Part shown: positions 13,780-52,868 of the stretch, piece after piece
Numbering within the stretch: the stretch's first letter is position 1
How the letters are laid out: each line of letters begins with the position of its first letter
Assembly: GCA_052426225.1 (NCBI GenBank)
Contig: JBNJNM010000012.1
Location: 1,302,001-1,366,000 of the forward strand
DNA: 64,000 nucleotides
Direction of reading: 5' to 3'
From: Zancudomyces culisetae HAW-14-8
Taxonomy: Eukaryota; Fungi; Kickxellomycota
Position numbers and translations under genes: made by a program
Notes under the pieces: generated by a model
The model's input: only the letters and a program-made list of their open reading frames with translations
What the model was told of the DNA's origin: nothing
Databases searched by the model: none

Positions 13780-16700
13780 TAATTTACTATATATAATTGA
13801 GTTTTGATATTTGAGCAAAAACCTACCTAAAACCAAAAAAAAACATAGGTAGTGAAGCGTAACACAATTTTCAAAGGGTATCAGAAAGGTATCAGAGTCT
13901 AATTTTTGGACCAAAATTAATCGTTTTGCACATCAAATTTTAGGAGTTGGGCGTAATTTTACCCAGTTTTATCGCATTTATTGAAGCAATAAATACATAA
14001 ACTAAATTAAATATAAGCTAAAAAGGTAGGGTTGACTAGTTAAATAAAGTGAAACTTATTCCAGTAACAATCCCCCTCTATTAGCAGAACTTTTTGTAGG
14101 TTTAGTTGCGGAAATTTCCTGAGAAATTTTCTGCAATCTAAAATTACAACAAACTATGTATATAGTAAACCAAGACATACCTTGAAACAGTTTAGTTTAG
14201 TAATCATATGTTTTTAATTAGTATTATGATTTTTATTACAAGTTTTAAACAGTATATACAAATTTATGCTTTAACTTTCAGTAGTAAAGTTTATGTATCT
14301 TTGTATAGTTTTAATAGTATTTTTTAAGTTAGCAGTAAAAGTATATAAGTGCAGGGAAATAGCACATAATAAAACACATCTTTAATCCAAATAAATAGTA
14401 GTAATAAGTTCTTTTATTCAGTATACTAATATTCAATTGTTAATAATAACAATATTAACGGATATTTGGTATAGTAAGTGAATAGGATAAAGTTCAAGTA
14501 TATTTTAAGTTATTAAAAGTTTAAGTTAAAATAAAAATATAACAACTAATGTCGTATAGCAGATACGACATTTTTTTGATTAGTTTTTTTTGCTGGCAAA
14601 TTTTTCTAATCGCTAAAACATAGCATAAAAATTATAAAATTTGATAAAGTAGATAAAAAATTAGTTAGTTTTAGTTTTTTAGTTTTTTTAAGTTTTTTTT
14701 AGTCAAAAAATAAAGAATTAGTAATAGAATAAACAAAAAGATATACAAAATATAAGTACAAAACTATATATAATATACACTGTTTTCAATACATAGTAAT
14801 ATTTAATATACAAGAATAGCATAGTGTTGAAAGTTAGGATATAAGTTTTATAATAAAAATATATTTTAAACCCAAAAAATATAACAGTGGCGATCACGGT
14901 GGGACTAGTTGAAACAGACTAGTCCAGTTCACGATAAGAGCAAGACAGACGTAGATAAACTTATTAGATGAATAGCAAACATAATTTCTACATAATTAAT
15001 ACGAATCAAAGATAGCATGACAATTACAACACCTAAAACGTTTGAGGTGAACAAGGGTATAGACCCTGAGGAGTGGATAGAGGATTTTAAACTTATAGCA
15101 AAACTGAATGGATGGAATGATTTTGATCTGATTGACTTAGTAAAACTATTCTTGGGAAGCAGGGAAAAAATTTGGTATAAAAAGAATAGGACAACTTTTA
15201 ATACTTGGGATGAGCTAGCTAAAAAATTTAAGGAAAAGTTTAGTACTAAAAGCTCAAAAGGAAAAGTGTGGGAAAGACTAAGATCTATCAAACAGACAGA
15301 ATTCGGAAACGTTGATGAGTTCGAGGTAGAACTCGTTCAGTTGTTAGATCAAGCAAAGATTAAGGATGAAGAGATAAGGTTTGACATCCTCCTTAGCACA
15401 CTCAAATGGGAGACAAAAGAAAAGGTGGAGTCATTAGATATCAAAAAGTGGGAAAGAGTTATGGAGCTATTGTTGAATGAGGAAGGATCTACAGAGAGTA
15501 TACCTCGCAAGCAGGAACTCAGAGAGAAAAGTAGCGGGCCAAGTAAAGAATATAATGCTAACGCAGCGTCAAGGGGAAAGAGTGTAAAGGACCTGGCAAA
15601 GCAGCAAATACCTATGGGAGACATGTTGAAAAAGTTTGAAGAAATGAGTGTCAGTTTAATAACCAAGGTAGAACAATTAGTGGATAAGAGATTAAAAAAG
15701 GCTACAGTGAGTAGCCATAGACCACAACCTTACGTGGTTAGATGTTACTACTGCAATGAACAAGGGCACCGCAGGTACGAATGCCCGAAGATGAAGGAAA
15801 GTGAACCAAGAGATAGTGGAAAGGTAGATATACAGAAAAGTATAAACTACATAGAGTTAGATAGGAATACGGACACAGATGAAAACAATGCAGACGTGTT
15901 TGCGGTAGATAAGAGAAAACACAACGAGGTAGCTGGTGGCAGTAGTGAGCAAAGAGCTTCAAGATACAAGACCACACGTGTGAGCAGAGACTCATTTCAA
16001 GGAGCCGAACCAAGTATCATAGGCAGTTCAGTTACTGAGTTCAGAGAAGGAACCACTATTAATGATGGTGGTACAGCACATAGCAAGCAGTCGTCTAGAA
16101 GCCAACAAACACTGAAAAACAGTAACAAGACGTTTTCCATTGTAGAGGAGCTGCGGAAGGTACATCCAAAGATAGACGTGTTACAACTGCTAGAAAGCGC
16201 TCCGGCATTGTCAGAAGAATTGACAAATTTCTTAAGAAAAGAAAAGGCTGCTGAGTTAAATGAAATTCAGTTGCAGGAGAAGAAAACATCAAACTGTCGA
16301 ATATTAGTTAATGTTTTCGGACAGAAGCTATGGGCGGTGGTGGACACGGGAGCAGCTTGCTCCGTAGTCACATACAATTTAGTAGAAGGCTGGGGAATCG
16401 AACTGGATAGCAAAAAAGGATTGACATTGGTTACTGCAGACGGGAAGCGTCACAGTACATTAGGAAAAGTCAATCAGGTTCCCGTAATGATCTCAAGTTT
16501 CACCCTCCCGGTAAACTTAGTAGTGATGTCAAGGAATGATGACACTCTCATACTAGGCACAGATTGGTTACTTCAACACCGAGTATCCTTGAATCTGAAA
16601 GTACCAGAGCTTCGAATACCAGTAGAAAACGTTGAGATAGTAACCAGACTAGAAACGTCTTGTGAAGAAGGGCCAGAGGAGGAAGATACAGAGTTATACA

Positions 16701-17601
16701 CCGTTATTAAAGACACACCAGTAGGCGTAGGAACATCGCAGGGAACTGAGTTTAAGGACGTAATTAGCGAATACAAGAGCTTGTTCGTTAATGATCTTTC
16801 GGAGTTAACTCAGACAGGAGTTACAGAACATCGAATAGTGCTAAATGACAACATGCCAATTAGGCTAAGACCCTATAGAATTCTATTCAGACTACAAGAA
16901 GAAGTTGCAAACCAGTTAGTAGAAATGGAGAAACAAGGGATCATATCGCCCACTACTTCTGAGTGGTGCGCTCCCGTAGTTGTCGTTCACAAAAAGAACG
17001 GAAAAATCCGTATTTGCGCAGACTATCGCCGGTTAAATGAGGTAACGAAAAAGGATAGTTATCCACTTCCCGTTATTGCGGATCTGTTTATGGCTCTATC
17101 AGGTGCAGCCATCTTTAGCTCGCTTGACGCCATGAGCGGATTCTGGCAAATAAGAATGCACCCGGCAGCTAAATCGAAAACAGCTTTCGCCATACCCGGT
17201 AGCGGTGCGTACGAATATAACGTTATGCCGTTCGGACTCACCAACAGTCCGGCGACATTTCAGCGAGCGATGGAAAAGGCGTTAAATGCAGTGTTGTGGA
17301 AGTGCGCAGTCGTCTTTGTAGATGATGTTATAGTTTATTCAAGGAGTGTAGAGGAGCATAGAGAAGATCTAAAACGAGTTTTGTCGTTACTTAAGGAGCA
17401 TAACATACAATTGCATTCGGATAAGTGCGTAATAGGTTTCACAGAGTTGGAATACCTTGGACACACAATCTCAAAAAATGGAATAGGGACAAGTGCTAAG
17501 AAGGTAGAAGCTATTATGAATATTAGGTCACCACGCAACGTAAAGGAATTACAATCGGCACTGGGATTAACAGGCTATTACCGTCGATTCATACCAAACT
17601 A
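13780..17601. repeat. Right arm of the inverted repeat (partner 1-3820)
   Basis: Reverse complement of the left arm. Confidence 0.95.
14888..14905 (+). promoter_or_regulatory. PBS of A (tRNA-Arg-like 3' end)
   Basis: TGGCGATCACGGTGGGAC, 1 nt after the LTR; tRNA identity is by resemblance only. Confidence 0.7.
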
Positions 17602-19455
17602 TGCAAAGGTTACACAGCCAATTACTAAGTTACTCAGAAAGCAAAGTGTATGGAGCTGGGATACAGAGCAGGAAGCAGCATTGAGACAGCTAAAGGAGCT
17701 AATGGCATCGGCGCCTGTACTTGGACATGCCGATTGGACTAGAGAATTTGTTATTACGACGGATGCTTCAATCGTAGGAATAGGAGCGATACTGACTCAA
17801 TTCACAGACGAAGGCAAAAAGGTGATAGAATACGCAAGCAGAAGGACTACAAAATCTGAAAAAAACTACGCCATTAGCCATCTTGAGGGGCTCGCGGTCA
17901 TCTGGGCCGTGAAAAAGTTTAAGTTCTACGTTTATGGAAAAAAATTTAGAATTAGAACGGATCATAAGTCCTTGCTGCAGTTATTCCATGGTTCGGAAAT
18001 CACAGGAAGAGTTGCCCGCTGGGCAATGTATCTCCGTAACTTTGACTACGAAATAGAACATCTACCAGGAGCCGTTAATCCGGCAGATGCACTTTCCCGG
18101 CTACTGCACCAGGAAGAGTCGGAAAAAACTATTAACGAACTGAAGGTGTATGCTAAGGACAGACTAGAGTATGAGGATATTACATCCTATATTGTTGATG
18201 GGACACTGCCCAATCAAGCTGATGAGGAGTACAAGAGGAGGCTTAAGAGGGGGGCAAAACATTATATAGTCACGGATGGTAAGTTATTGAAAGTAGTAAA
18301 TAACACAACTAAAGTAGTATTACACTCAGAAAACAGCAGAGCTCTGATAAGATCAATTCATGAGGAGGGTCATGAAGGGATCGAAAACACTTGGAATAAA
18401 GTCACTCAAAAATACACAGGCAGGAACTTGTATAAGGAAGTTAAACAGATAGTGGAAAGTTGCAGGACACGCCAGCATTATAAAGGGGCAAGATCGCGAC
18501 GACACCCGTTGGTTCCGATATTATCTTCAAAGCCATTCCAAATTGTCGGAATTGACGCAGTCGGTCCCATCTCACCGGTCTCGGCTAATGGTAACAGGTT
18601 CATTCTGACGGCAATCGATCTGTTTACTAAATGACCTATTGCAGCTGCCGTTCCAAACATCCAGAGTAATACGATTGTAAACTTTTTAGTAAACGAAGTG
18701 GTAGCATACTATGGTGTTCCACAACAGCTGATAAGCGATAGAGGACCGAGTTTTTTATCTGAAGCAGCAACACAGGTATATGAGTGGCTTGGTATAAATC
18801 ATACCCCGACGACCGCCTACCGACCCCAAAGTAATGGGCAGGTAAGCAACTGAATCAGACATTAGTTACCGTGCTTATAAAGCAGTGTCGGAATGATAAG
18901 CAAAGTTGGGATTCATATTTGTGAAAAACCTTGCTAGTAATCAGAACATTACGGAATAAATCAACTGGATTATCACCAGCTCAGATGCTATACGGTATCG
19001 ATTTGGAGTTACCGTCTACATGGAATTATAATGGAGACATAGATAATATCGAGGAATTGATAATTAGTAGAGTGAAGCAGATTAAAGACGAGTTGCCACA
19101 GTTGAGAGAAATAGGACTACGAAGATCAGTAAAGTCTAAACAGATGCAAGCGGAAAGATATAATGTGAAGGTAAAACTATTTAGGTTCGAACCGGGTGAA
19201 TTTGTTTTGAAACTAGTGGATATGGAACGATCGAAACTGGAGCATTATTGGGAAGGCCCGTATAGAGTGGAAAGAGTACTGAGTAAAGGGACATATATCA
19301 TAAACGATAATGAAGGCAACCGGGAGCTCGTTCATGGAGATATGTTGAAGAAGTATATATCGAGTAACCACATGATCCCTGATGTAACAACCACTCTGAA
19401 GACAAAACTCAAACGGTTCAAGCAGCCAAGGCGCGATGAGGGCATCCGCGCTTAA
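15017..19455 (+). pseudogene. gag-pol of A (single ORF; integrase broken)
   Basis: CYYCNEQGHRRYEC, VDTGA, FVDD, TDAS and GPY motifs; TGA at 18632 and 18922, and a 1-bp deletion near 18845. Confidence 0.92.
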
Positions 19456-19806
19456 GGGGGGGAATCTGTCGTATAGCAGATACGACATTTTTTTGATTAG
19501 TTTTTTTTTGCTGGCAAATTTTTCTAATCGCTAAAAAATAGCATAAAAATTATAAAATTTGATAAAGTAGATAAAAAATTAGTTAGTTTTAGTTTTTTAG
19601 TTTTTTTAAGTTTTTTTTAGTCAAAAAATAAAGAATTAGTAATAGAATAAACAAAAAGATATACAAAATATAAGTACAAAACTATATATAATATACACTG
19701 TTTTCAATACATAGTAATATTTAATATACAAGAATAGCATAGTGTTGAAAGTTAGGATATAAGTTTTATTATAAAAATATATTTTAAACCCAAAAAATAT
19801 AACACT

Positions 19807-20202
19807 TGTCATATAAAATTGGCGTGATTACCCCTGGACTACAATAAAGGTAATACCAGTTTCTCGTTTATTATTTATTAGTTATTATTTACTTGTGAGA
19901 AGATTGAACTTTTCTCCCGAAGAGGGTTTTATCTGACTTCTCTGATAATAGGTTCTTTTGTTATCAGTTTTTTATTGAGATAAATTTTAGATAGAAGTTA
20001 ATATTTTTATATATTTTATATATTTTATAAGAGAAATAAAAAAAAAGTATAATATAATAAAAGACTGTCCACGCCTCCATAATTGTTAGTTACGCAACAA
20101 GATAGTTTAAACTCTCTCTTGAAAGTAAATAGCAAGGTGTTTAGACACTTATTACCCATAACGGGTATAAAATATTTTAAATAATAAATAAAATATTTTA
20201 CA
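19807..20202 (+). repeat. Solo LTR C (family of the element H LTR)
   Basis: TGTCATAT..AAATTG start and internal blocks shared with 34059-34456; begins 2 nt after LTR A. Confidence 0.8.
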
Positions 20203-20203: not shown

Positions 20204-21450
20204 TGTCGCAATAAGCCGAATTGTAATGCAAATTCGAATAGTGTACAAGAAATTTTGTTGTACACTCATTGCGGAATGCCAATTTTTATAATTTTTATTG
20301 TCGTTTAAATTTTTGTTCAAATTAATTTCGACTCAGCATGAAATAAATTCTACATGCTGAGTCCATTCAATAATGATGATTCTAGTACGAAATATGTTTT
20401 CATACTGAATATCAAATAATTTTAATGATTATGTGTTCCCACACATAATCTTAATTGCACGTATGCTGCAATTATGAAACAAAACTATTAGTATACTTAA
20501 CAGCATAATAATAGTGTATAGTTAATTTATTATATTGAAAAACTAGGTTAGCATTTAAGTTTTATATCATATATATAATTGATATAGTAGTCTATTAGGT
20601 AACTTTTCCATGTCCTACTTTACGGATTAAATAGTATAGTTAATAAACTCAATAAAACAAACTTTAAAAGTATATACATATAATAAATAACCAAACATCA
20701 TGAACTATTTCTTTTATACCAAGAGTAAATCCAAGAGGGATTCTGAAACTAGCTCCAGCCTGAGCACGGCTAGTAGCATGGACCAAGAGACTGGGGTTTT
20801 AAGTCCTCGGACTCTTGGGGAGTTGACAGAAAGTGTCCGTCAACTCCAAATCCGTAGGAGCCCAGAACCAATGTCCGTGAGCAGTATCTCACCGACATTG
20901 TATAGGGGAAACAGCTCACCCGAGCACCTTATTATGCACATCACACTACGGGGTAGTGGTGCATCTTCATCAAGTGGTCATACCCGAACTGGTATGACAC
21001 ATGATGAACTTAATAATCATGGTTACACGAATTATGATTATTACGACAACACTAATGTCGCATCAATGAGCGACAGGATGTACATCACACGGGTGCTTTC
21101 GTGTGATGTGCAAAGACTTACACGGTGTTTTTCACCTATGAGGTTTTTCCCGTGTAAATCTCTATTAATTTTTATATTAATTTTATATTAATTTTATCAA
21201 TGTTTCTTATATAGTTATAATATAGTTAGTTTATTATAAAATATGAGAGATCAGATATAAGGCTAATTATCTGACCTACTGAATTCAGTATCTTTTTTTT
21301 TTAGTTTATAATCAAAAATAAACACATTAAGCCATTGAATCTGGGTCCTACCGTCTTCAGGTAGTTATTAGATTATAGTATAAACTTTCAAAATACTTGT
21401 TAAGGCGGTAAAGTCGGGTAAAACCGACAAGGAAAAATTAAATTCCGTCA
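20204..21450 (+). mobile_element. Long LTR-like unit D carrying a small ORF
   Basis: TGTCGCA start; homologous to 34461.. and 46298-47332; right end approximate. Confidence 0.65.
20700..21191 (+). CDS. Ser-rich protein of unknown function inside unit D
   Basis: 163-aa ORF; a 58-codon core is conserved with 46424..47020, mostly with synonymous differences. Confidence 0.6.
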   Translation: MNYFFYTKSKSKRDSETSSSLSTASSMDQETGVLSPRTLGELTESVRQLQIRRSPEPMSVSSISPTLYRGNSSPEHLIMHITLRGSGASSSSGHTRTGMTHDELNNHGYTNYDYYDNTNVASMSDRMYITRVLSCDVQRLTRCFSPMRFFPCKSLLIFILILY

Positions 21451-21452: not shown

Positions 21453-24400
21453 TGTCGTATAATAATACGATGGGAACTAAAATTGATTGAGATTTATCAT
21501 CTCAATTTTCATCTATCTAGTTATTGATTTTTATAGGTTATCTTTATTTTTAGATTGGACCTTTTTCCCCTTGTGGTTTTTGTCCAACGATTATTAGTTA
21601 GTTAGTTTAAGTTATAGTTTCATAGTTTTATATCAGAAATCGGGGGTAAAAGGAATCCCCCACTTCATTCAAAATAAATTTTATCTTTCAACAAAATAAT
21701 ATGGTGTCTAGCTACATTATATACTATAAGTACAACATTATAAATAAATATACAATATAGTAGTAGTTTTAAATACATTAATAATCAGAATAAGAATAAA
21801 CAATAGGGAAAGCTGTTTATACGACAGTGGCGCTCCCAGCTAGGCCATAGCTAGAAAAACTAAATAAAAACTATATAAAGAACTTGAGTACATTGTGAGA
21901 ATGAACACCATACACTTATTTGAGGCAGCTTCTGGTGAGGATCCTGAGGAATGGATCGCAGACTTTTGTCTAGTAGCTAAATTAAATAAGTGGGATAAAG
22001 ATGATTGGATAGACTTTATTCAATTGTATTTAGGCAAAATTGAGAAGTTATGGTATAAGAAGCATAAGACGGCATTTAAGGATTGGGCCGACTTCAAAAC
22101 GCAGTTCACTACACAGTACCAAGTTAAGGAACAGAGATTTCAGTATTATGAAAAGCTCAAAAATATTGACCAAAATTCCTTTGAAACAGTTGAGGAATTT
22201 GAGTACAACTTGGAAAATATATTGGATAAAGCGGGGATAAACGAGGACGTAGCCAAGATAGACTGGTTACTGAGCGCACTTAATACAGATTCAAGAAGTA
22301 TAGTCAAAGAATTCAGACTTAAAACCTGGAAGAGTATTATAGAGAAGTTAAAGAAAGTTCAAGAAGAGGCTGTCCACAAGCAAGTACAAGTGGATAATAC
22401 AAGTAAAGTTCAAAAACCCAGCATAACCACAAAAGGGAAATCCATAAAGCAGTTGACCAATGAAAATGTAGGGTATGAACAGATGGTCAAAAAGATGGAT
22501 GAGTGGAGTCTGAACATTATTTCAAAAGTTGATGAGACTATTGAAAAAAGATTAAAAAATACAAATGTCTTTCCTTACAAACGGGAAAACCCCAGAGTTG
22601 TCAAATGTTATTATTGTCATCAGTTAGGTCACCGAAAGTATGAATGCAATAAACTCAAAGAACAGCAGGCTCAGGAACAAAGTAAAATAGATAAGGACGT
22701 AAGTTTTTTAGAAGTTTGCAGCTCACAACAAAATGACAATGAAGTACTAGCAGTACAAAGAACACCCCGCACACAGGATACCAAAAAGCCGTACAACAAG
22801 ACTAAGCCGTTACAGCTGAGACAAAAAGGGTACACACCCATAACAGAATATGACAGGGCTATAGAGAGACAAGATATAGTTATGGAAACAGGTGAACCCG
22901 AAGTAGTTTCAAGAATAGGAAACACAACAGCTGGCCTTGACTCGCGTAGAAGAGAGACATCAAAAACTGGAGAAAAGTTAGAAGATAGTGTTAAGCAAGT
23001 AGAGAAACCTAGGGCAAAGGGTGTACTAGGAATGGCAGAAGGAATACCGCCCTTTTCGTTAAAAGAACAGTTATCAAGTTGGTGTCCCAACATATCTTTT
23101 CCACAGTTGATGGATGTTTCACCTAGTTTAAATAACGAGATGATAAGTTTGTGTAGACGTAGTAAAAAAGCTGAATTAAATGAAATAAGATTTGACATAC
23201 CTAGAGTTACAAATTGCAAGATTAGAATATCAATTTTTGAATCAAACTTTTGGGCAGTAGTAGACACAGGTGCAGCGTGCTCAGTAGCTGCACCGGGATT
23301 ATTAGAACAGTGGGGGCTCATAGCGGAAGATGAAGGTGATCAGATTATAATTACGGCCGATGGAAATAAGCACTATTCGTTAGGTAGAATAATGGATGTC
23401 CCATTAATGATAGGCAGGTACAAGTTCACAGTCAATCTGACAGTAATGGATAGAAACGACAACACGCTCATTTTAGGTACAGACTGGTTGTTAGAACACA
23501 AGGCCCAATTAAATCTGAAGACATCGGAAATGAAACTGCCAGTTGAACAGTTTGAGTTGATAGTACCTTTACATACTTCAGCTCCCTCGTTGCCCTCTAG
23601 CAAAAATACATCCGAGCTTTATTATGTTCTTAAAGAAGAAGTAGCAGAAATAAATGGGCTGCAGCGCTACAATGATATGCGGTTTGACTAAATTAAACAA
23701 GATAATAGTGATATCTTTGCCGATGACATTGAGCAATTGACTCAGACTGAGGAAGCTGAACATAGAATATTGTTGAATGACGAAACCCCAGTAAAGCTTA
23801 AACCATACAGAATTCCGCACCATTTGTATAGCAAGGTACGCGACGAACTCAAGAAAATGGAAGAGAAAGGAATAATTTCCCAGTGTGTGTCCGAATGGTG
23901 TGCACCAGTTGTTACCATTTGGAAAAAAAATGGCAAACTGCGTGTGTGCACTGATTATAGGAGGCTGAATTTACAAACAAAGAAGGATTCCTATCCGCTG
24001 CCGACGATGGAGGATATTTTCATGGCATTGTCTGGTTCATCAGTGTTTTCAACTCTAGACGCTCTTAGCGGATTTTGGCAAATCCGCATGGCCAAAGAGG
24101 ATAGGTTGAAAACAGCGTTCTCTATTCCGGGTACCGGGACGTACTGCTATAATGTCATGCCATTCGGTTTGACAAACAGTCCCGCGTCTTTTCAACGTAT
24201 GATGGAGAAGGTTCTATCTCCTGTGCTTTGGAAGTTTGCTGTAGTCTTTGTGGATGATATTATCATCTACTCAGAAAATATTGAAAGTCATTTATTGCAT
24301 CTCCAGGAAATATTTGATTTATTGCGAAAAAGTAAAGTACAACTACATTCTGACAAGTGATTCATTGGAATGAAGGAGTTGGAATACTTGGGACATGTCG

Positions 24401-26846: not shown

Positions 26847-26848
26847 TT

Positions 26849-42062: not shown

Positions 42063-42065
42063 AAA

Positions 42066-42136: not shown

Positions 42137-42357
42137 TAAAATTTTGTACATGAATCAACAATGTATTTTACGTTTCATACATATTGTAATATAAAATTTT
42201 GCCATATCTTTAGTAATAACCCACAATAAACACATGGCGAGTTTAGTATTAATATACTTCTAAAAATCATTTAATTCTGACGATCAGGTAATATACGAGC
42301 GTTAACAACCAATAAGGACATTGTTAGCATTTCATAACTGAATATACTTTACAAATA

Positions 42358-43964: not shown

Positions 43965-43994
43965 TATTACACAAGAAATTTATTTTATCAACAC

Positions 43995-45137: not shown

Positions 45138-45555
45138 TGTCGTAGTATATGAAATTTTATTATATAATTTTTGTATACCACAGTACGACAAATCTGAATA
45201 TACTATAAATCTTTGGTTCAGAACACTAGTACTAGCTTTCTTATAATATTTTTTATGATGTATATATTTTAATAGTAATAGATATACTTATATAAACGCT
45301 AAAACAAAAGGATGAAGTTCGAACACTGTTTCCGTGTTCGCATGTTTCGAATTATATAGGGTATTGTAAAATGATATAAGAATATTTAAAGTAAAATAAA
45401 TCTAACTACTTAAAGTATATATGTTTTGGGACAGATTGTAACAAAAACCACAATGGTGAAAAAGTTACGTATAACAATGCCCAACGTTTTATAATAATTA
45501 AAACTGTTATAAAAATAAATAATATTTAGGGTATGGTGTAAAATCGCACACGACA
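45138..45555 (-). repeat. Solo LTR L4 (L1-related)
   Basis: TGTCGTAG...CACACGACA; shares CAGTACGAC and AAAAACCACAATGGTG with L1. Confidence 0.8.
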
Positions 45556-45559: not shown

Positions 45560-45827
45560 TGTTGTATGCCTATAATAGGCGAATCATTTCCATTATTAAA
45601 CGTGTTTTGTAATTTTTAGTTAGATTTTTTGTAGATTTTATTGTAGATTTTATTGTATAAAATTGAAATTTTTGGTAAACTATATAAATGTCCTCTTTTG
45701 CAAAATCATAATTTACTATAAAATATTCGCGGCATATAGTAAAAGGTAAGTAAAATGACCCGTCCCGTGTGTTATTTGGTGTAAAAAACACTAAATGGGA
45801 GCTTAAACATAACAACACACAAGAACA
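45560..45827. repeat. Solo LTR-like unit L5
   Basis: TGTTGTATG start (as in the K LTR terminus); ends in AACA at 45817 or 45827. Confidence 0.55.
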
Positions 45828-45829: not shown

Positions 45830-46292
45830 TGTTATATAGTGGCTAGAGCTACCTCTAGTCATTATATAATTTTAACTTACCAGTTATTCATATACTTTTA
45901 TATTAATATTTAGGTTTATCATTTAATATAAGATATTATTTATTATAGGTTATTTATTATATTATGTGTTGCCTAGTTTTTTTTATCCTTCTAGATTTTT
46001 TCTACAGCAACACTCTAGTTCAATTTAATATATATTTTATAGGATTTATATTTAATTAGTATAAAATTATTTCAGAATATTGTAATAGTCATTTTTAAAA
46101 TGTATAAATAAGGCTAGATATTCATTTAGTATTACATTATCAAATAAATATAATTTATTTAAATTTGGTCTATTTAATTTAGCATAGTTACTATAGTGAA
46201 AACAATTTTAAACATAGTACTTAGTATAGTATTCCTATCAAAATAAATATATAATAATCAATATAGCGAAGTAAACCTGTGTTTTGCTAACA
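45830..46292 (+). repeat. Solo LTR L6 (J-related), TSD CAAC
   Basis: TGTTATATAGTGGCTAG...CTAACA with CAAC on both sides. Confidence 0.85.
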
Positions 46293-46297: not shown

Positions 46298-47332
46298 TGT
46301 CGTATAAAATATTATACGTTATAGATTTCTCATCTATTGTAATTAATAGTGTTATTTTATTGGTTATTTATTTAATAGTTTTTGTAGTTGATTTTGTAGT
46401 ATTTAAATCAATGAAATTTTTAGTTAAATAAATTTGTCGTCTCTTAAATATAATAATAGTACATATAAATATTTATAAACAGTAACTATTAGCGGCCCGA
46501 CTCGTGTAGTGCTTGGAAGCCAATAGCTTTCAAGTAGGACGTAAAACATTTCTACTACACGACAAACATGTGTCGCATAATGTGAAGTATCACTACTTCC
46601 ATTAGCGCTACCATCACGTGTTATACCGGTTTTGGTACGATCACTGATGGTTGATGCACTTCTATTGCGTAATGCAATGTGCATCGAGGGGTGCTCGGGT
46701 GAGCTAATACCCCTGTACAGTGTCGGTGAAATTGTACTCACCGACATTTCTTCCGGGCTCCTACGGATCTGGAGTTGACGGACACTTTCTGTCAACTCAC
46801 CAAGGGTGCGGGGACTTAATACCCCTGCATCCTGATCCATGCTGCTGCCCCTGCTCATGCTGGTAGAAGTGTGTGACTCCCTCCTGGAGTCACATTCGGT
46901 TCCAATCCAACTGTTTAAAAACTTTATTGCTAATATATCTTTTGGTTTATATTTGATTTTATTTAATTGTTTTATTATAATATTCCGTATCGAGACATGG
47001 ATGAGGTTTTCATATGTCATCCATACGTCTCCTTAAATATATTATTCAAATTTTAAACCACTATTATAAACTAAATACTAAAATATGACTATTGTATAAT
47101 ATATTAATAATTTGTTTGTTATTAATGATAAATGTAAAATGCCTGGGATCATTTTACATTTTACATTCATCATTATTGAACTAGCTCAGTAAAAAATTGA
47201 TTGCATACTGAGCTCAAAATTATTTGAATTTATTTAAAAAAAGTAAACAAAAATGAATTTGCATTTTCGCACTGAGTGTACCATTTTCAGGCACATCCAC
47301 GTGCTATTGTACAAATTGTTAATAATGCGACA
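46298..47332 (-). mobile_element. Long LTR-like unit L7 (1035 bp) carrying a small ORF
   Basis: TGTCG...CGACA termini; homologous to units D and I. Confidence 0.8.
46424..47020 (-). CDS. Ser/Thr-rich protein of unknown function inside L7 (true start may be downstream)
   Basis: 198-aa ORF; conserved core MDQDAGVLSPRTLGELTESVRQLQIRRSPE..ISPTLYRG..SPEH. Confidence 0.6.
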   Translation of the reverse strand: MTYENLIHVSIRNIIIKQLNKIKYKPKDILAIKFLNSWIGTECDSRRESHTSTSMSRGSSMDQDAGVLSPRTLGELTESVRQLQIRRSPEEMSVSTISPTLYRGISSPEHPSMHIALRNRSASTISDRTKTGITRDGSANGSSDTSHYATHVCRVVEMFYVLLESYWLPSTTRVGPLIVTVYKYLYVLLLYLRDDKFI

Positions 47333-47333: not shown

Positions 47334-50300
47334 TGTAGTATTTTTATTATTTGTATACTAGTGAATATTTATTTATTAAGTTTTATTATATATATAAAGT
47401 AATAAGATATTTAAATAATAGTTCGATGCTTCTTTCAAAAAGTGAAGAAAAGTTGGGGTTTATATAGTTTTTCTGTATGTCAACATTGTTTTGAAATCAC
47501 TAACATGTTCTTCTGTTGTTCAAACATGTTTTATTAATTGATGCGTTTTTTATCTTTTCTACCCCTACATTTCTTATCATGTTAACAGTTCACTCAAAAC
47601 AGCATCGTTACCCCGTGTTAACACACGTGGTTTGGTGTAATTTATCCGCATGATAAATTACACTGATTTATTTTGAAACATATAAATGCGTTAATAAAAT
47701 TAAATGATATTAATACTAATAATTAAACAAATGTATGGGGAAAAACCCAGTGGGAAAAAGTGCCCATACATATACTATAAAAACTAATACGACAGACCCC
47801 CTCCTAAACTTCGATCGTCCCGATTCGAATAAGGATGGTCTTTATATCTTCTTAATACTGGCTTTAATGTACTTGGTGCCACATCTGGAATCATATTTTC
47901 GGATTCTCTGTATTTCTTAAGTCTGTCACCATTCACTTGATCCAGGTTATTATCCTCATCTCTAATAATGTAAGTACCTTTGTCTAGTACTCTAACTATA
48001 GTATATGGACCTTCCCATATTGCTGAAAACTTTGAAGTGGGCATTTCCACTTTCTTAAGTACTTTATCTAGTAACTTGAACTTGAAAACTGTTACTTTCT
48101 TATTGTATCTTTGGACTTCATATTCCTTGTTTTTGATTATCTTTTGTGATGCTAGGTCTCTTAATACTGGGAGGTTGACTTCTACAAACTTAAGCCTTTC
48201 CTTAAATGCTTCTGTTTCATTTTCATTAGTAACTTCAGAAGTCCACGTAACTGGGGTTCTTATATTGCTCCCGTAAAGCATTTTGGACGGGGATACACCT
48301 AAAATTCGGTGTTTCATTGTGCGAGCAATCAACATTGCTCTCCATAGATATCTGTCCCAATTCTCTTTATCTTTCCAGCACAACTTAGATAGGACATTTT
48401 TTAACGTTTGGTTAAATCTTTCAACTTGGCCGTTGGACTGTGGGCGATAGGACGTAGTAGGATGATGTTCTATACCTACAAACTTATAGAACTCATCTGC
48501 AATTTCACTTATGAACCCGGACCCTCTATCAGATATCAACTTCCTAGGGACACCGTGATTCATAATAACATCATAGACTAAGAAGTGGACTATTGTTTCA
48601 GTTTGGATATTTTCTACTGCCTTTGAAATTGGCCATTTAGTATAGTAATCCATGGCTGTTATGATGTAACGGTTTCCATCCCTCGAAACTGGGGAAATGG
48701 GACCGATTGCATCTATACCTAAAATTTCGAATGGCTCTGAGGCTGTAATTGGAACCATTTCGTTTCTTCTCTTAGGTCCTCCTTTAAATCTTTGGCATAC
48801 CTCGCAAAAGTTAACTACTTTTTTTACTATCTCAAACGTATTTGGACCGGTGAACATTAACTTGACCTTCTCCCATGTATTGGAGATACCAGTATGGTCA
48901 TGATTATGCAAATCCTTGATCTTCAGATAAGCATTTTCTTCAGATAATACTTCTCTTAGCCCAAACTTTTTGCTATGTGCAAATAGTACTCCGTCTTTTA
49001 AAATGTACCTTGTGGCGTGTAAACGAATTTTTCTTTTTGCTTCTTCATCGGCTAAATTTGGATATGTGCGATCATTCAAGTATTGTTTTAGGGCATTATG
49101 TTTGTTAATTTCCATGCTGAATAATGTTATGCATTCTTCTTCAACCTCTTCCTGCTTGAATTCTTGTTTATCATTAGGTGTTGCCCTGGACAGATAGTCA
49201 GCAGGATTTAACGTGCCCTTTCTGTGACTTATTTCAAAATCATATTCTTTCAAAATGAGAGCCCATCTAGCTAGTCTCCCTGTAGCTTGCTTTGAGTGAA
49301 ATAAATTAATCAAGGCTGAATGATCTGTGACTATTTTAAATCTTTTTCCCCAGACGTAATTCCTGAAGTGATTAACAGCCCAGATAACTCCAAGTCCTTC
49401 TAGATGTGTTGCAGAGTAGTTTCTTTCTGGTTTAGTAAGTGACCTACTTGCGTACGCTATTGGATGCTCTTTGCCGCTTTCTGTTTGGCTAAGAATGGCG
49501 CCTAGTCCATTTGCAGAGGCATCAGTTGTTATCGTGAAGGTCTTGTCCCATGATGGGTGTCTCAGAATAGGGGCTTCTTTCAGTAGTGTCTTGAGTTTGT
49601 CTACTGCTTGTGTACATTCTTCACTCCAATGCCAAGTTACATCTTTTCTCAATAGTTGCGTTAAAGGTCTAGTAATTGATGCATAATTCTTGACAAACTT
49701 TCTGTAATATCCTGTCATACCCAGAAAACTTTGTACTTCCTTAACTGTAGTAGGATAGGAGAGTTTTGCTACTGCCTCAGTTTTTTTTGGATTTGTTTCT
49801 ATCCCTTCACCACTTATGATGTGGCCTAAATACTCAATGCGTTTCTGGGCGAAAACGCATTTAGCATAATTAAGCTTTATTTTTGCCTTTCTCAATAATT
49901 CAAAAACATTATCGAGGTCTTTTAAATGTATATCTAAATTTTCTGAAAAAACAACTATATCGTCAATAAAAACAACAACAGATTTCCATAAAACTGAGTC
50001 CAATACTTTTTCCATTAGCCTTTGGAATGTTGCGGGGCTATTAGAAAGGCCAAACGGCATTACGTTATAGCAATAAAGACCTTCGCCTGGAAAAGAGAAC
50101 GCTGTTTTTAACTTGTCCTTCTCACTGATTCGAACTTGCCAGAATCCTGACATTGCATCTAGTACGCTATAAACTGATGCACCTGCCAGAGCCTCAAATA
50201 TATCCTCTATTACCGGAAGGGGATAGTGATCTTTGCGTGTAACTGAATTTAAGCGTCTGTAATCTGAACAGATTCTTATTCCACCGTTTTTTTTCCATAC

Positions 50301-52786
50301 AGTCACGACTGGAGAACACCAGTCTGACTGACAAGGCTCGATTATTCCAGCTTCCTTCATGCGATAGATCTCCTGTCTGACCATTTCTTTCATTGCATGC
50401 GGAACTCGGTATGGCCTTGACTTTACGGGTTTGTTGCCATCTGTTACAATTTCGTGTTCTACGACATTAGTGCTTGTTAGCTCTGACAGATCTTTTGCTA
50501 GGATGTCCTTGTTCTTTGATACTAATTCTCTGATTCTCTGATCCAAAATTTCCTCTTGATTATTGTTTTCCACTCTGCATACTTCTTTTGCAATTCCAAT
50601 AAGCATTTCATTACTAGATTTGCATGCATCTTTATGCATTTCCAACGGTACCACCAGTTGCTCATGATTATATGGTAATAACAACTCCAGCGTATTCATA
50701 TCTATTATAGCTTCATGCTTTTTGAGCCAATCGGTTCCCAGCACTAACGATTCATCCTTTCCCTCCATCAATAGCAGATTACCGTTAAACCTTTTGCCCA
50801 TAATTTTAATAGGAACATTGGCGATCATGTTTGATATATGATGATGCTGTCCGTCTGCAGTAAGTATCACCTCGTTAACTTGTACGTCCGCTTCCAACTT
50901 AAGTTTATTTGCCATTTGTCTTGTTACTACGCAGCAAGCGGCTCCAGTGTCAATTACCGCTTTACAGCTGATTGTTCCTACTGTTACTACTGCTTTGCAA
51001 TTTGATGTTTCCTTGTTTTTTACTGTGCTTATATCCTTACTTGTACCAGCATTTTTGAATATTCTGCTAAGCTCATTTCTTACTATAGGTGCAGCTTTTA
51101 TCAATTGTGATACTGATATGTTTGCTTTCATGTTATCCAACTCTCTTTGTATAGAATAATCTTGGTTTGGCTGGTTGGATTTCATTTCCATCATTGATTG
51201 TTTAGGTGCTTGTTTTTTTGGTAGTATATTCTTATTATCTACTACTTCTGTCAGTGGTTGGTCAACATTACTGCTTTTAGGTATGGTCTCTGCATTTAAT
51301 TCATCTGTCAGTTTGATGGATTTTAGTTTTTCGGTGCGATCCTGTTCTAATAATCTGCGTTTTTCCACTATGTTTAATTCCTGCCACATTTTATCCAACA
51401 CATAAACATCTGATATCTTAACTCCGGTCTCTGATGATGCTGAAGGTGATATCTGCCTGTCTATGAATTGCAAAGTGTGTGGTTTAATACTTTGCCTTTC
51501 GTCATTATTCCTTAAGTTCCAAGGTCCTTTTGGGCACTTAGAACTGTAGTGACCCTCTTCCCTACAGAAAAAACATGCATTTTTCCTTTGTAACTCTGCT
51601 TTTTCTTGTTCCGAAAGTCTCATTCTGCTCGGTTTCTTCACCGAATCCGTTTGGTCTAAATGTTCTTTGGTTGTTTTCATTATGTACTTTTTCATTTCTT
51701 TAATTTCATTCATCATTTTCTTCATTTCTTTACCATTTTCTTCATTTTCATTGTCATTAGTAATATTAATTTTGCATAGTTTGTCCATGTTTTCCTTTTC
51801 AGTTGCGACCCTAACTGCTTCATTGTATGTAGTTGCTCTTGATTTTATTATTTCTTCTTGAAATTCAGGTCTTAAGGAACTGATCAGGCATTTGAATTTT
51901 ATTTCATTGTTGGTTGTATTTGATTTCTCAAATAGTAATTCTATCTTGAACAAGAAATCTTCTAGCTCCTCAGTACTGTTCTGTCTTAATAGCTGAAGCT
52001 CTCTCCATGATCTTATGTCTGATTCTACGCTGCTAAACTTCCTTATGAATTCATTCCTTAACTCAGGCCAAGTACCTACTCTAAGTCTTTCCCTTTCATA
52101 CCATTTTAATGCCTTGCCATCCAAAAATAATTCCATATAGTCAATTTGATCTTCTTCAGACCACTGTTCACTTCTTCCATACAGTTCATATCTTCTGGTC
52201 CATGTGGCAACGTTAATTCTGCTTTCTCCTGTGAATAGTACTGGCTCCATAAGCTTTTTTGCTGCGGTAGAATTTCCAATCATTTTCTGCTTTATGTCAG
52301 CCTGGTCCTGGCTGGATCACCAAAATGTAGTATTTTTATTATTTGTATACTAGTGAATATTTATTTATTAAGTTTTATTATATATATAAAGTAATAAGAT
52401 ATTTAAATAATAGTTCGATGCTTCTTTCAAAAAGTGAAGAAAAGTTGGGGTTTATATAGTTTTTCTGTATGTCAACATTGTTTTGAAATCACTAACATGT
52501 TCTTCTGTTGTTCAAACATGTTTTATTAATTGATGCGTTTTTTATCTTTTCTACCCCTACATTTCTTATCATGTTAACAGTTCACTCAAAACAGCATCGT
52601 TACCCCGTGTTAACACACGTGGTTTGGTGTAATTTATCCGCATGATAAATTACACTGATTTATTTTGAAACATATAAATGCGTTAATAAAATTAAATGAT
52701 ATTAATACTAATAATTAAACAAATGTATGGGGAAAAACCCAGTGGGAAAAAGTGCCCATACATATACTATAAAAACTAATACGACA
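47334..52786 (-). mobile_element. Ty3/Gypsy element F, apparently intact; LTRs 47334-47794 and 52326-52786; TSD ACAC
   Basis: 461-bp LTRs with no differences seen; PBS TGGTGATCCAGCCAGGA (52306-52322); PPT AGGAGGGGG; ends 8 nt before tRNA-Val. Confidence 0.97.
47784..52283 (-). CDS. Gag-Pol polyprotein, uninterrupted
   Basis: 1499 aa with CFFCREEGHYSSKC, IDTGA, FIDD, TDAS, HHCC, DDE and WEGPY motifs. Confidence 0.97.
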   Translation of the reverse strand: MIGNSTAAKKLMEPVLFTGESRINVATWTRRYELYGRSEQWSEEDQIDYMELFLDGKALKWYERERLRVGTWPELRNEFIRKFSSVESDIRSWRELQLLRQNSTEELEDFLFKIELLFEKSNTTNNEIKFKCLISSLRPEFQEEIIKSRATTYNEAVRVATEKENMDKLCKINITNDNENEENGKEMKKMMNEIKEMKKYIMKTTKEHLDQTDSVKKPSRMRLSEQEKAELQRKNACFFCREEGHYSSKCPKGPWNLRNNDERQSIKPHTLQFIDRQISPSASSETGVKISDVYVLDKMWQELNIVEKRRLLEQDRTEKLKSIKLTDELNAETIPKSSNVDQPLTEVVDNKNILPKKQAPKQSMMEMKSNQPNQDYSIQRELDNMKANISVSQLIKAAPIVRNELSRIFKNAGTSKDISTVKNKETSNCKAVVTVGTISCKAVIDTGAACCVVTRQMANKLKLEADVQVNEVILTADGQHHHISNMIANVPIKIMGKRFNGNLLLMEGKDESLVLGTDWLKKHEAIIDMNTLELLLPYNHEQLVVPLEMHKDACKSSNEMLIGIAKEVCRVENNNQEEILDQRIRELVSKNKDILAKDLSELTSTNVVEHEIVTDGNKPVKSRPYRVPHAMKEMVRQEIYRMKEAGIIEPCQSDWCSPVVTVWKKNGGIRICSDYRRLNSVTRKDHYPLPVIEDIFEALAGASVYSVLDAMSGFWQVRISEKDKLKTAFSFPGEGLYCYNVMPFGLSNSPATFQRLMEKVLDSVLWKSVVVFIDDIVVFSENLDIHLKDLDNVFELLRKAKIKLNYAKCVFAQKRIEYLGHIISGEGIETNPKKTEAVAKLSYPTTVKEVQSFLGMTGYYRKFVKNYASITRPLTQLLRKDVTWHWSEECTQAVDKLKTLLKEAPILRHPSWDKTFTITTDASANGLGAILSQTESGKEHPIAYASRSLTKPERNYSATHLEGLGVIWAVNHFRNYVWGKRFKIVTDHSALINLFHSKQATGRLARWALILKEYDFEISHRKGTLNPADYLSRATPNDKQEFKQEEVEEECITLFSMEINKHNALKQYLNDRTYPNLADEEAKRKIRLHATRYILKDGVLFAHSKKFGLREVLSEENAYLKIKDLHNHDHTGISNTWEKVKLMFTGPNTFEIVKKVVNFCEVCQRFKGGPKRRNEMVPITASEPFEILGIDAIGPISPVSRDGNRYIITAMDYYTKWPISKAVENIQTETIVHFLVYDVIMNHGVPRKLISDRGSGFISEIADEFYKFVGIEHHPTTSYRPQSNGQVERFNQTLKNVLSKLCWKDKENWDRYLWRAMLIARTMKHRILGVSPSKMLYGSNIRTPVTWTSEVTNENETEAFKERLKFVEVNLPVLRDLASQKIIKNKEYEVQRYNKKVTVFKFKLLDKVLKKVEMPTSKFSAIWEGPYTIVRVLDKGTYIIRDEDNNLDQVNGDRLKKYRESENMIPDVAPSTLKPVLRRYKDHPYSNRDDRSLGGGLSY

Positions 52787-52794
52787 ACACATGT

Positions 52795-52868
52795 GATTTC
52801 TTGGTGTAGATGGTTATCACGTCTGTCTAACACACAGACGGTCGCCGGTTCGAGTCCGGCAGAAATCA
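52795..52868 (+). tRNA. tRNA-Val(AAC)
   Basis: GATTTCT/AGAAATC acceptor stem; TCTGT-CTAACAC-ACAGA anticodon arm; followed by a T6 terminator. Confidence 0.95.

What the first reader, a model, noticed from the sequence alone, without database searches (positions are those of the whole stretch)
14544..52868. Multi-family retrotransposon docking site just upstream of tRNA genes: ordered LTR trains recording insertion history
Seen: all three tRNA loci have an LTR element ending 9 nt (Phe), 8 nt (Ser) or 8 nt (Val) before the mature tRNA. Behind it are 4-8 further units from different families and in both orientations, abutting with ~1-7 nt spacers rather than nesting. There is no stack on the 3' side. 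Known: Ty3 and Dictyostelium DGLT-A/TRE elements target Pol III genes. Inference: a whole non-chromodomain Gypsy clade (A, B, H, K, F plus about 6 solo-LTR families) shares one Pol III-positioned site. Each insertion pushes older ones outward, giving a polarised, time-ordered archive. I do not know of this being described at such depth and family diversity.
Basis: partly seen in the sequence, partly recalled or inferred. Interest (0 to 1): 0.92.

Follow-up and report, generated by a model that had tools for sequence, protein, structure and literature searches.

The report
Retrotransposon stacks in front of tRNA genes
In this insect-gut fungus (order Harpellales), a whole group of related retrotransposons inserts again and again a few bases in front of tRNA genes, leaving ordered stacks of old copies; the behaviour is known from yeast Ty3 but is new for this fungal lineage and uses a differently built integrase.

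Summary
All three tRNA loci (Phe-Leu, Ser-Gly, Val) have a full-length Ty3/Gypsy element whose LTR ends 9, 8 and 8 nt before the mature tRNA. Each has identical or near-identical LTRs and a perfect 4-bp target-site duplication (TSD).

Behind each lie 4-8 more LTR units from about 14 families, in both orientations, separated by 1-10 nt. Of 17 units, 8 have perfect 4-bp TSDs as they stand. Three more match only after the younger, tRNA-proximal neighbour is removed. The chance rate is 0.7-5%. Several left TSD copies include the last CA/ACA of the older neighbour's LTR, which proves distal is older. After peeling, each LTR end sits 5-10 nt (once 2 nt) from the tRNA.

The five coding families, together with 16 Zancudomyces and Smittium proteins, form one integrase clade. 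A Zancudomyces member lies 7 nt from tRNA-Ile.

The mechanism is most likely Ty3-like tethering to the Pol III initiation complex. These elements are not Ty3-lineage members: 4-bp rather than 5-bp TSD, no chromodomain, one ORF, and a closer landing site.

I rate it a new member of a known kind, in a new fungal phylum, with unusually clean stacks. Genome-wide proof is missing.

The parts
26774..26930 (+). tRNA-Phe(GAA) 26774-26846 and tRNA-Leu(CAA) 26849-26930, a dimeric gene with a 2-nt spacer. It is the target of the Phe train. The 9-nt flank 26765-26773 begins with B's right TSD copy, cact.
41981..42136 (+). tRNA-Ser(TGA) 41981-42062 and tRNA-Gly(GCC) 42066-42136, a dimeric gene with a 3-nt spacer. 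It is the target of the Ser train. The 8-nt flank 41973-41980 begins with K's right TSD copy, acga.
52795..52868 (+). tRNA-Val(AAC), target of the Val train. The 8-nt flank 52787-52794 begins with H's right TSD copy, acac.
13781..14151 (+). Y0, a 5'-truncated solo LTR and the most distal recognisable unit of the Phe train. The fuller inverted copy at 3450-4138 is 95% identical to the LTR of a full-length Zancudomyces culisetae element (L008).
14157..14544 (.). Y1, a solo LTR with TGT..ACA ends and a perfect 4-bp TSD, acta.
14550..19804 (+). Element A, a full-length gag-pol element. Its 338-bp LTRs (14550-14887, 19467-19804) are 99.1% identical. Its ORF 15017-18634 is broken within the integrase. 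The TSD ctaa closes only if unit Fl duplicated just 'ct'.
19807..20202 (+). Fl, a solo LTR distantly related to the F LTR. Its TSD is ambiguous, matching at 2 of 4 nt.
20204..21048 (+). G_Phe, an 845-bp G-family unit with perfect TSD acac. The left TSD copy is made of the terminal ACA of Fl plus c. The unit carries a conserved ORF that runs out of its 3' end.
21056..21450 (.). X, a solo LTR. Its TSD ctaa closes only after element B and one copy of B's TSD are removed.
21453..26764 (+). Element B, full length. Its 374-bp LTRs (21453-21826, 26391-26764) are 99.7% identical. Its TSD is cact, with the left copy made of the terminal CA of X plus ct. The pol region is split into three ORFs. It ends 9 nt before tRNA-Phe.
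29670..34450 (+). Element F: internal region plus a 3' LTR (34059-34450). No 5' LTR is present. After younger units are removed it lies 8 nt from tRNA-Ser.
34461..35052 (+). G_Ser, a G-family unit truncated at its 3' side and 97.8% identical to G_Val. Its left flank is cagt. It probably landed 2 nt from tRNA-Ser, because the present flank of the tRNA equals the last 6 nt of a G unit plus ca.
35053..35130 (+). The last 78 bp of an A-type LTR (97% identical to A), joined to the truncated G_Ser by an internal deletion.
35136..35594 (+). M, a solo LTR of the same family as V6 and as the full-length Z. culisetae element in L006. Its TSD cgac closes only after K is removed.
35598..41972 (-). Element K. 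Its 596-bp LTRs (35598-36193, 41377-41972) are 100% identical and its TSD is acga. It keeps gag (37527-38465) and integrase (36223-37509) but lacks protease, RT and RNase H. It has a 2.9-kb leader without ORFs. It ends 8 nt before tRNA-Ser.
43995..44378 (.). V1, a solo LTR with perfect TSD acac, distantly related to V4.
44386..44805 (.). V2, a solo LTR with no matching TSD.
44811..45136 (+). V3, a solo LTR partly related to the B LTR (82% over 86 nt), with no matching TSD.
45138..45555 (.). V4, a solo LTR with no matching TSD.
45560..45821 (.). V5, a solo LTR about 85% identical to solo LTRs in Z. culisetae contig L004 (5277-5528), with shorter related pieces in L006 and L010. It has no matching TSD. 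It contains a 13-nt match to the start of tRNA-Phe that is part of the LTR, not a tRNA remnant.
45830..46292 (+). V6, a solo LTR of the M family (76% identical to M, 85% to Z. culisetae L003), with perfect TSD caac.
46298..46564 (.). V7, a solo LTR with perfect TSD aaca.
46571..47332 (-). G_Val, a G-family unit. Its TSD catg closes only after H is removed. It then lies 5 nt from tRNA-Val.
47334..52786 (-). Element H. Its 461-bp LTRs (47334-47794, 52326-52786) are 100% identical. It has one intact 1499-aa gag-PR-RT-RH-IN ORF (47784-52283). Its TSD is acac, with the left copy made of the terminal ACA of G_Val plus c. It ends 8 nt before tRNA-Val.
28106..29669 (-). A degenerate Tc1/mariner-like DNA transposon with terminal inverted repeats of about 190 bp. 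It abuts the 5' end of F. It is not part of the LTR system but interrupts the train.
42354..43968 (-). A second degenerate Tc1/mariner-like DNA transposon with terminal inverted repeats of about 230 bp, starting 217 bp downstream of tRNA-Gly.
1..3821 (-). An inverted copy (99.8% identical) of 13781-17601, covering Y0, Y1 and the 5' part of A. Any tRNA belonging to this arm would lie beyond the left edge of the window.

Best explanation
These are LTR retrotransposons of a Harpellales-specific, chromodomain-less Ty3/Gypsy clade. Their integrase is directed to a window of a few nucleotides just upstream of tRNA genes.

How it most likely works. TFIIIC on the internal A and B boxes places TFIIIB and Pol III at a fixed distance from the gene. 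The intasome is tethered to that complex. It makes a 4-bp staggered cut that leaves the LTR end 5-10 nt (once 2 nt) from the mature tRNA 5' end, in either orientation.

Why stacks form. The ruler is the tRNA gene, not the upstream sequence. A gene that has already been hit therefore stays a target. Each new copy lands between the previous copy and the tRNA and pushes the older copies outward. Older copies then decay to solo LTRs or fragments.

What is shown: the position, the TSDs, the order of insertion, clade membership and the integrase architecture.

What is inferred: the tether to the Pol III machinery, and which part of the integrase makes the contact. Candidates are the SH3-like C-terminal domain or the short conserved tail after it.
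For: Position and youth of the proximal elements. All three tRNA loci carry an LTR end at 9, 8 and 8 nt, with perfect 4-bp TSDs and LTRs 99.7-100% identical.

TSD chain. Eight of 17 units have perfect 4-bp TSDs as they stand. Three more (X, M, G_Val) match only after the proximal neighbour and its TSD are removed. The null rate is 0.7% for arbitrary TGT..ACA pairs and 5% for shuffled unit pairings.

Constant distance. After peeling, reconstructed distances to the tRNA are 9, 7, 10 and 7 nt (Phe), 8 and 7 nt (Ser) and 8, 5, 7 and 8 nt (Val).

Order of insertion. The left TSD copies of B, G_Phe, K and H include the terminal CA/ACA of the distal LTR, so the proximal unit arrived later. The present flank of tRNA-Ser equals the last 6 nt of a G-family LTR plus ca.

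Age. The only distal full-length element, A, has more diverged LTRs (99.1%) than the proximal B (99.7%).

Independent families. Different families, different tRNA species and different TSDs at the three loci rule out a single duplicated locus.

Other genomes. In Z. culisetae contig L006, a full-length M-family element ends 7 nt before tRNA-Ile. It has a V5-type solo LTR behind it. In S. culicis contig L001, a clade member lies just upstream of a tRNA polycistron, across an assembly gap. Z. culisetae contigs L003, L004 and L010 show abutting LTR units with 2-6 nt spacers.

Clade. The integrase tree puts A, B, F, H, K and 16 Harpellales proteins in one clade (SH-aLRT 99). It is separate from the chromodomain element in the same window, which is not next to a tRNA.
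Against: - There is no genome-wide census. The evidence is one 64-kb window plus ten short contigs.
- One basal clade member (S. culicis L007) has no tRNA within 41 nt on its left or 470 nt on its right.
- Units V2-V5 and Fl lack clean TSDs. The L006 element also lacks a matching TSD.
- The trains contain a deletion junction (35052/35053) and DNA-transposon insertions.
- The Pol III start sites are unknown. Landing 5-10 nt from the mature end could be downstream of the start site, unlike Ty3.
- No protein contact was tested.
- The left 14 kb of the window holds clade units with no tRNA inside the window.
Confidence: 0.85

Rival explanations
1. LTR-end homing. The elements recognise the termini of resident relatives, not the Pol III complex, and insert next to them. 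The tRNA only seeded the first copy.
For: Every reconstructed target overlaps or abuts the terminal CA/ACA of an older LTR. Trains without a tRNA on the contig exist in Z. culisetae L003, L004 and L010 and in window 1-5981.
Against: - Insertions always fall at the tRNA-facing end of the most proximal unit, never detectably at the distal end or at inner junctions.
- The three youngest elements, with LTRs 99.7-100% identical, are all the proximal unit.
- The distance to the tRNA stays at 5-10 nt whichever LTR family lies upstream, and in both orientations.
- The first unit of each train must have landed with no LTR present.
- The contigs without a tRNA are short and end inside repeats.
Confidence: 0.06
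2. A passive transposon graveyard or centromere-like island. Elements accumulate here through relaxed selection or heterochromatin targeting. tRNA genes happen to cluster in the same region, as at Schizosaccharomyces japonicus centromeres.
For: About 50 kb of the window is almost pure transposon sequence. It includes a chromodomain Gypsy element, two Tc1-like elements and a large inverted duplication. In S. japonicus, tRNA genes and Gypsy families cluster together at centromeres (PMC5911963).
Against: Nucleotide-precise spacing at three of three loci, the TSD chain and the abutting architecture are not expected from passive accumulation. The two ideas are also not exclusive: targeted insertion could itself build such an island, as was shown for Tj1.
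Confidence: 0.05
3. Segmental duplication or an assembly artefact copied one tRNA-plus-LTR junction to several places.
For: A 3.8-kb inverted duplication at 99.8% identity is present. LTR pairs that are 100% identical could be produced by assembly polishing.
Against: The three junctions involve different tRNA species, different element families (39-48% amino-acid identity), different TSDs and different orientations. The same junction type occurs in an independent Illumina assembly of Z. culisetae.
Confidence: 0.02

Closest known systems
Ty3 of Saccharomyces cerevisiae (also Ty3p)
   Same: - A Ty3/Gypsy-order element (PR-RT-RH-IN).
- Nucleotide-precise insertion just upstream of tRNA genes, in both orientations.
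- The tRNA gene is left intact.
- Solo LTRs are left in front of tRNA genes.
   Different: - Ty3 makes a 5-bp TSD at -6/-2 from the Pol III start. It contacts Brf1 through a vestigial chromodomain after the C-terminal domain (PMC8632968).
- Here the TSD is 4 bp.
- The integrase has no folded domain after the SH3-like C-terminal domain.
- gag-pol is one ORF in H.
- The LTR end sits 5-10 nt from the mature tRNA end, nearer than Ty3. [quoted passage not shown]
- Prototype foamy virus integrase is a better sequence and fold match than Ty3 integrase.
Tj1-Tj10 of Schizosaccharomyces japonicus
   Same: Many Gypsy families sit in one genome, clustered with tRNA genes. Tj1 was shown to insert 1-10 bp upstream of tRNA start sites (PMC5911963). 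This is the closest analogue for multi-family use of tRNA sites and for large transposon-tRNA islands.
   Different: It is an ascomycete, with gag and pol as separate ORFs, and the clustering is at centromeres and telomeres. No sequence comparison was made here. I did not find a report of ordered trains with TSD chains.
DGLT-A of Dictyostelium and other dictyostelids
   Same: It is a Ty3/Gypsy element with a single gag-pol ORF that lies upstream of tRNA genes in either orientation (PMC5911963; PMC5006619). From my own knowledge, not checked here, its integrase has no chromodomain. Repeated insertions at one tRNA gene are noted there (PMC5006619).
   Different: [quoted passage not shown] It belongs to Amoebozoa. 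Its relationship to the present clade was not tested.
Tca8/beta LTR of Candida albicans; Ylt1, Tyl3 and Tyl6 of Yarrowia lipolytica
   Same: Gypsy elements or solo LTRs within 5-30 bp upstream of tRNA genes in fungi (PMC5911963).
   Different: All are Ascomycota, with fewer families per site. They were not compared at sequence level here.
Prototype foamy virus integrase (structural relative only)
   Same: It has the same four-domain layout (N-terminal extension, HHCC domain, catalytic core, SH3-like C-terminal domain). It is the best sequence and fold match. From general knowledge, it also makes a 4-bp TSD.
   Different: It is a vertebrate retrovirus with no Pol III targeting. The resemblance concerns the enzyme only, not the targeting.

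Membership tests
Pol III start-site-targeting LTR retrotransposons (functional class: Ty3, Tj1, DGLT-A, Tca8, Ylt1) | The LTR end lies within a few tens of nt upstream of the mature tRNA sequence, far more often than chance. | tested here: met
   Distances are 9, 8 and 8 nt at all three loci in the window and 7 nt at tRNA-Ile in Z. culisetae L006. Reconstructed older insertions lie at 5-10 nt, once at 2 nt.
Pol III start-site-targeting LTR retrotransposons (functional class) | True integration events, shown by TSDs flanking each element at the tRNA site. | tested here: met
   Perfect 4-bp TSDs for B, K and H, and for 8 further units (3 of them only after peeling). The null rate is 0.7-5%.
Pol III start-site-targeting LTR retrotransposons (functional class) | Insertion in either orientation relative to the tRNA gene. 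| tested here: met
   B, A, F and M are on the plus strand. K, H and G_Val are on the minus strand.
Pol III start-site-targeting LTR retrotransposons (functional class) | Genome-wide association of the family with Pol III genes. | not testable with these tools
   The source genome could not be reached: exact-protein look-ups found nothing. Only ten short Zancudomyces and Smittium contigs were available. One has a clean junction, one is near tRNA genes across a gap, and one has no tRNA. The other seven are uninformative.
Pol III start-site-targeting LTR retrotransposons (functional class) | Dependence on TFIIIB/TFIIIC bound at the target gene. | not testable with these tools
   This needs integration assays with promoter mutants or protein-interaction tests.
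Ty3 lineage proper (Saccharomyces Ty3/Ty3p) | 5-bp target-site duplication. | tested here: not met
   All clean TSDs here are 4 bp. Ty3 makes 5 bp (PMC8632968).
Ty3 lineage proper (Saccharomyces Ty3/Ty3p) | A vestigial chromodomain after the integrase C-terminal domain, which contacts Brf1. | tested here: not met
   - No Chromo or SH3_Tf2-1 Pfam hit in A, B, F, H or K, while the chromodomain element in the same window has both.
- The clade integrases end 25-45 residues after the SH3-like domain.
- In the AlphaFold model the last fold ends at about residue 390, and residues 401-432 are disordered.
Ty3 lineage proper (Saccharomyces Ty3/Ty3p) | gag and pol as two ORFs joined by a +1 frameshift. 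| tested here: not met
   H encodes gag through integrase in one 1499-aa ORF.
Ty3 lineage proper (Saccharomyces Ty3/Ty3p) | Phylogenetic placement next to Ty3. | tested here: inconclusive
   No Ty3 sequence could be put in the tree. By sequence, H integrase matches prototype foamy virus integrase (85 bits) better than Ty3 (62 bits). The fold search gives the same ranking. The clade is separate from the chromodomain-bearing sequences.
Harpellales chromodomain-less Gypsy clade (defined here) | Monophyly of the integrase, with a shared C-terminal tail motif. | tested here: met
   The clade has 21 rows with SH-aLRT 99. A conserved tail follows the SH3-like domain. Identity drops sharply to the next relatives, from 39-57% to 35% or less.

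The most novel reading that the evidence does not exclude
Pol III start-site targeting arose independently of Ty3 in a Harpellales-specific Gypsy clade that has radiated into a dozen or more families. The clade uses a foamy-virus-like four-domain integrase without any chromodomain. The contact to the Pol III machinery would be made by the SH3-like domain or the short conserved C-terminal tail. The intasome lands closer to the gene, possibly inside the pre-tRNA leader. Repeated use of the same sites builds transposon-tRNA islands tens of kilobases long, which may serve as chromosomal landmarks such as centromeres in these fungi.
Probability: 0.4. Interest if true: 0.65.

Novelty: new member of a known kind. 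Interest (0 to 1): 0.5.

Why it matters
- **Phylogenetic reach.** Precise tRNA-gene targeting by LTR elements was known from Ascomycota and Dictyostelia. This extends it to Zoopagomycota (Harpellales), in a clade whose integrase lacks the domain Ty3 uses to hold Brf1. That makes it a natural experiment on how many ways an intasome can be tethered to the Pol III machinery.
- **A readable insertion history.** The trains carry a TSD-verified relative chronology of insertions from many families at one site. This can be used to date family activity, to measure solo-LTR formation and decay, and to ask whether tRNA genes stay active when their whole upstream region is replaced again and again.
- **Possible tool.** The one fully intact element (H) and the trimmed gag-plus-integrase element (K) could become tools for safe-site integration.

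Tried and rejected
1. **A fossil tRNA-Phe in the Val train.** A 13-nt exact match (45793-45805) to the flank plus start of tRNA-Phe suggested that units V1-V5 once served a lost tRNA gene. I rejected this. The stretch is part of the V5 LTR and is conserved in Z. culisetae copies L004 and L006.
2. **V1 and V4 as the two LTRs of one small element.** I rejected this. They are only about 74% alike over 90 nt.
3. **Reaching the source genome.** Exact-protein look-ups for the H polyprotein and the RING gene found nothing. The best host-gene hit was Smittium angustum at 37%. Repeat DNA is 85-95% identical to Z. culisetae.
4. **tRNA scans of eight further relatives' contigs.** ARAGORN and Rfam found no tRNA. 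Most contigs are element-sized and uninformative.
5. **Other Pol III genes in the window.** An Rfam scan for 5S, U6 and similar genes found none. It therefore does not explain the clade units in the left 14 kb.
6. **The G-unit ORF and the 1138-aa host ORF.** Pfam found no domains in either.
7. **Age versus rank from solo LTRs.** I did not attempt this, because no family consensus is available from one window.

Full report
**What the window is.** The longest retroelement ORF (47784-52283, minus strand, 1499 aa) has gag, protease, RT, RNase H and integrase domains. Its nearest relatives are proteins of Zancudomyces culisetae and Smittium culicis, gut fungi of insect larvae in the order Harpellales. 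Non-coding repeats in the window are 85-95% identical to Z. culisetae contigs. A host RING gene at the right end finds only a 37% match in Smittium angustum. The exact proteins are not on record. I therefore take the source to be Z. culisetae or a close relative not in the protein database. About 50 kb of the 64 kb is transposon sequence. Only 52869-64000 looks like ordinary genome, and two long ORFs lie there.

**Check of the observation.** ARAGORN and Rfam agree on five tRNA genes at three loci:
- Phe 26774-26846 and Leu 26849-26930
- Ser 41981-42062 and Gly 42066-42136
- Val 52795-52868

Self-BLAST gives the LTR pairs:
- B, 21453-26764: LTR 374 bp, 99.7% identical
- K, 35598-41972: LTR 596 bp, 100% identical
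- H, 47334-52786: LTR 461 bp, 100% identical
- A, 14550-19804: LTR 338 bp, 99.1% identical

Behind them I delimited further units by their TGT..ACA ends and by homology:
- Phe train: Y0, Y1, A, Fl, G, X, then B
- Ser train: F, G, an A-type LTR fragment, M, then K
- Val train: V1-V7, G, then H

Spacers between units are 1-10 nt. There are roughly 14 LTR families, five of them with coding regions. Three of the solo-LTR families (M/V6, Y0 and H-like) match the LTRs of full-length clade elements in Z. culisetae.

**Are these real, ordered insertions?** I tested each unit for a 4-bp TSD and then 'peeled' the trains from the tRNA outwards.
- Eight of 17 units have a perfect TSD as they stand: B, G_Phe, Y1, K, H, V7, V6 and V1.
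- Three more (X, M, G_Val) match only after the proximal neighbour and one copy of its TSD are removed. This is what successive insertion at one site predicts.
- A fits if Fl duplicated only two bases.
- The chance rate is 0.7% for arbitrary TGT..ACA pairs in these regions. It is 5% when left and right flanks of different units are paired.
- The left TSD copies of B, G_Phe, K and H are built partly from the last CA or ACA of the older LTR beside them. The proximal unit must therefore have arrived later.
- After peeling, each LTR end lies 5-10 nt from the tRNA.

In the Ser train, the present 8-nt flank equals the last 6 nt of a G-family LTR plus 'ca'. This implies three steps. The G unit once sat 2 nt from the tRNA. 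An A-type element then landed 6 nt inside its end. A later deletion joined 35052 to 35053.

LTR identities agree with this order. The three proximal elements are the youngest, and the distal full-length element A is older. Five units (Fl, V2-V5) give no clean TSD. Recombination between neighbouring copies of one family, or small deletions, would explain this, but I could not show it.

**Clade and integrase.** H shares 39-48% amino-acid identity with A, B, F and K.
- In an integrase tree, these five group with 16 Zancudomyces and Smittium proteins (SH-aLRT 99). They are separate from chromodomain-bearing sequences and from the chromodomain Gypsy element at 5980-12586, which is not next to a tRNA.
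- Outside Harpellales, identity drops to 35% or less.
- The clade integrases end 25-45 residues after the SH3-like C-terminal domain, with a short conserved tail.
- The AlphaFold model (mean pLDDT 80) shows an N-terminal extension, an HHCC domain, a catalytic core, a long helix and an SH3-like domain, then a disordered tail.
- The best fold and sequence matches are prototype foamy virus integrase, ahead of Ty3 integrase.

There is thus no room for the vestigial chromodomain that Ty3 uses to contact Brf1 (PMC8632968).

**Other genomes.**
- In Z. culisetae contig L006, a full-length M-family element ends 7 nt before tRNA-Ile. A V5-type solo LTR lies behind it.
- In S. culicis L001, a clade member lies just upstream of a tRNA polycistron, but an assembly gap hides the junction.
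- Contigs L003, L004 and L010 show abutting LTR units with 2-6 nt spacers but end before any tRNA.
- S. culicis L007 is the basal member in the tree. It has no tRNA within 41 nt on one side or 470 nt on the other.

**Mechanism.** The distance is kept relative to the tRNA gene whatever lies upstream, and in both orientations. This points to a ruler on the gene side: TFIIIC on the internal promoter placing TFIIIB and Pol III, with the intasome tethered to that complex, as in Ty3. This step is inferred, not shown.

Differences from Ty3 are the 4-bp TSD, the missing chromodomain, the single ORF, and a landing site nearer the gene. That site may lie inside the pre-tRNA leader.

I weighed three rivals and rate them low:
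- homing to LTR ends
- passive accumulation in a centromere-like island
- duplication or an assembly artefact

The reasons are the strict polarity, the constant distance, and the independence of the three loci. An island could still be the product of the targeting.

**Comparison with what is known.** Pol III start-site targeting by Gypsy elements is established for Ty3, Ty3p, Tj1, Tca8, Ylt1, Tyl3, Tyl6 and DGLT-A (PMC5911963). Second hits on an occupied tRNA gene are mentioned for Dictyostelium (PMC5006619). Full-text searches found nothing on tRNA targeting in Harpellales, Smittium, Zancudomyces or Kickxellomycotina. The recent Z. culisetae long-read paper mentions neither tRNA genes nor LTRs.

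**Verdict.** The finding is a new member of a known kind: a new phylum, a distinct clade, a different integrase build, and unusually deep and legible stacks. Genome-wide proof and any biochemical test are still missing.

Noticed in passing
window 1-3821 versus 13781-17601: An inverted duplication at 99.8% identity covers Y0, Y1 and the 5' part of element A. It brackets a 10-kb segment that holds the chromodomain element. It could be a real palindromic rearrangement or an assembly artefact.
   Followed up: partly
window 26774-26930 and 41981-42136; L001 6383-6673 and 10766-11048: The tRNA genes are dimeric or polycistronic with only 2-3 nt between mature sequences: Phe-Leu and Ser-Gly here. In Smittium culicis there is a Val-Glu-Met run, preceded by a partial fourth tRNA, present twice in inverted orientation.
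   Followed up: no
window 35598-41972: Element K has identical LTRs and a perfect TSD. It keeps only gag and integrase, lacks protease, RT and RNase H, and has a 2.9-kb leader without ORFs (38494-41376) of unknown origin. It looks like a recently moved non-autonomous element that depends on a relative's RT.
   Followed up: partly
window 20204-21048, 34461-35052, 46571-47332: The G-family units (760-845 bp, flanked by TSDs) carry an ORF conserved at the protein level between copies only 78% alike in DNA. The ORF runs out of the 3' end of the unit and has no Pfam hit. Gag may start inside the LTR in this family.
   Followed up: partly
window 28106-29669 and 42354-43968: Two degenerate Tc1/mariner-like DNA transposons with unusually long terminal inverted repeats (about 190-230 bp). 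Each lies downstream of a tRNA dimer. A 90%-identical copy lies beside LTR trains in Z. culisetae L003.
   Followed up: partly
window 5980-12586 and 13400-13775: A chromodomain-bearing Gypsy element (LTRs 99.8% identical) and a related solo LTR sit inside the transposon island but not next to any tRNA. They contrast with the chromodomain-less clade.
   Followed up: partly
window 45793-45805; L004 about 5490-5510; L006 about 30-45: The V5 LTR family contains a 13-nt exact match to the flank plus first bases of tRNA-Phe. The stretch is conserved across copies in two genomes. I cannot tell whether this is coincidence or an old capture.
   Followed up: partly
window 21827-21850, 41350-41376, 52300-52325; L001 about 897; L004, L006, L007, L009: At least three different primer-binding-site types occur directly after the 5' LTR within this one clade. 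The priming tRNAs were not identified.
   Followed up: no
window 44379-44385 and 34451-34460; L004 about 55-63 and 5528-5533: A short 'acacagt'-like string recurs just before several LTR starts in the window, and related 'acagt' strings do so in Z. culisetae L004. In the Ser train it fits the tRNA flank plus the first two bases of tRNA-Ser. Elsewhere it is unexplained.
   Followed up: partly
window 57244-60660 and 60751-62490: Two intron-less host ORFs lie at the right end. One is a 1138-aa low-complexity protein with no Pfam domain. The other is a RING-H2 protein with a zinc ribbon, whose best database match is only 37% (Smittium angustum).
   Followed up: partly
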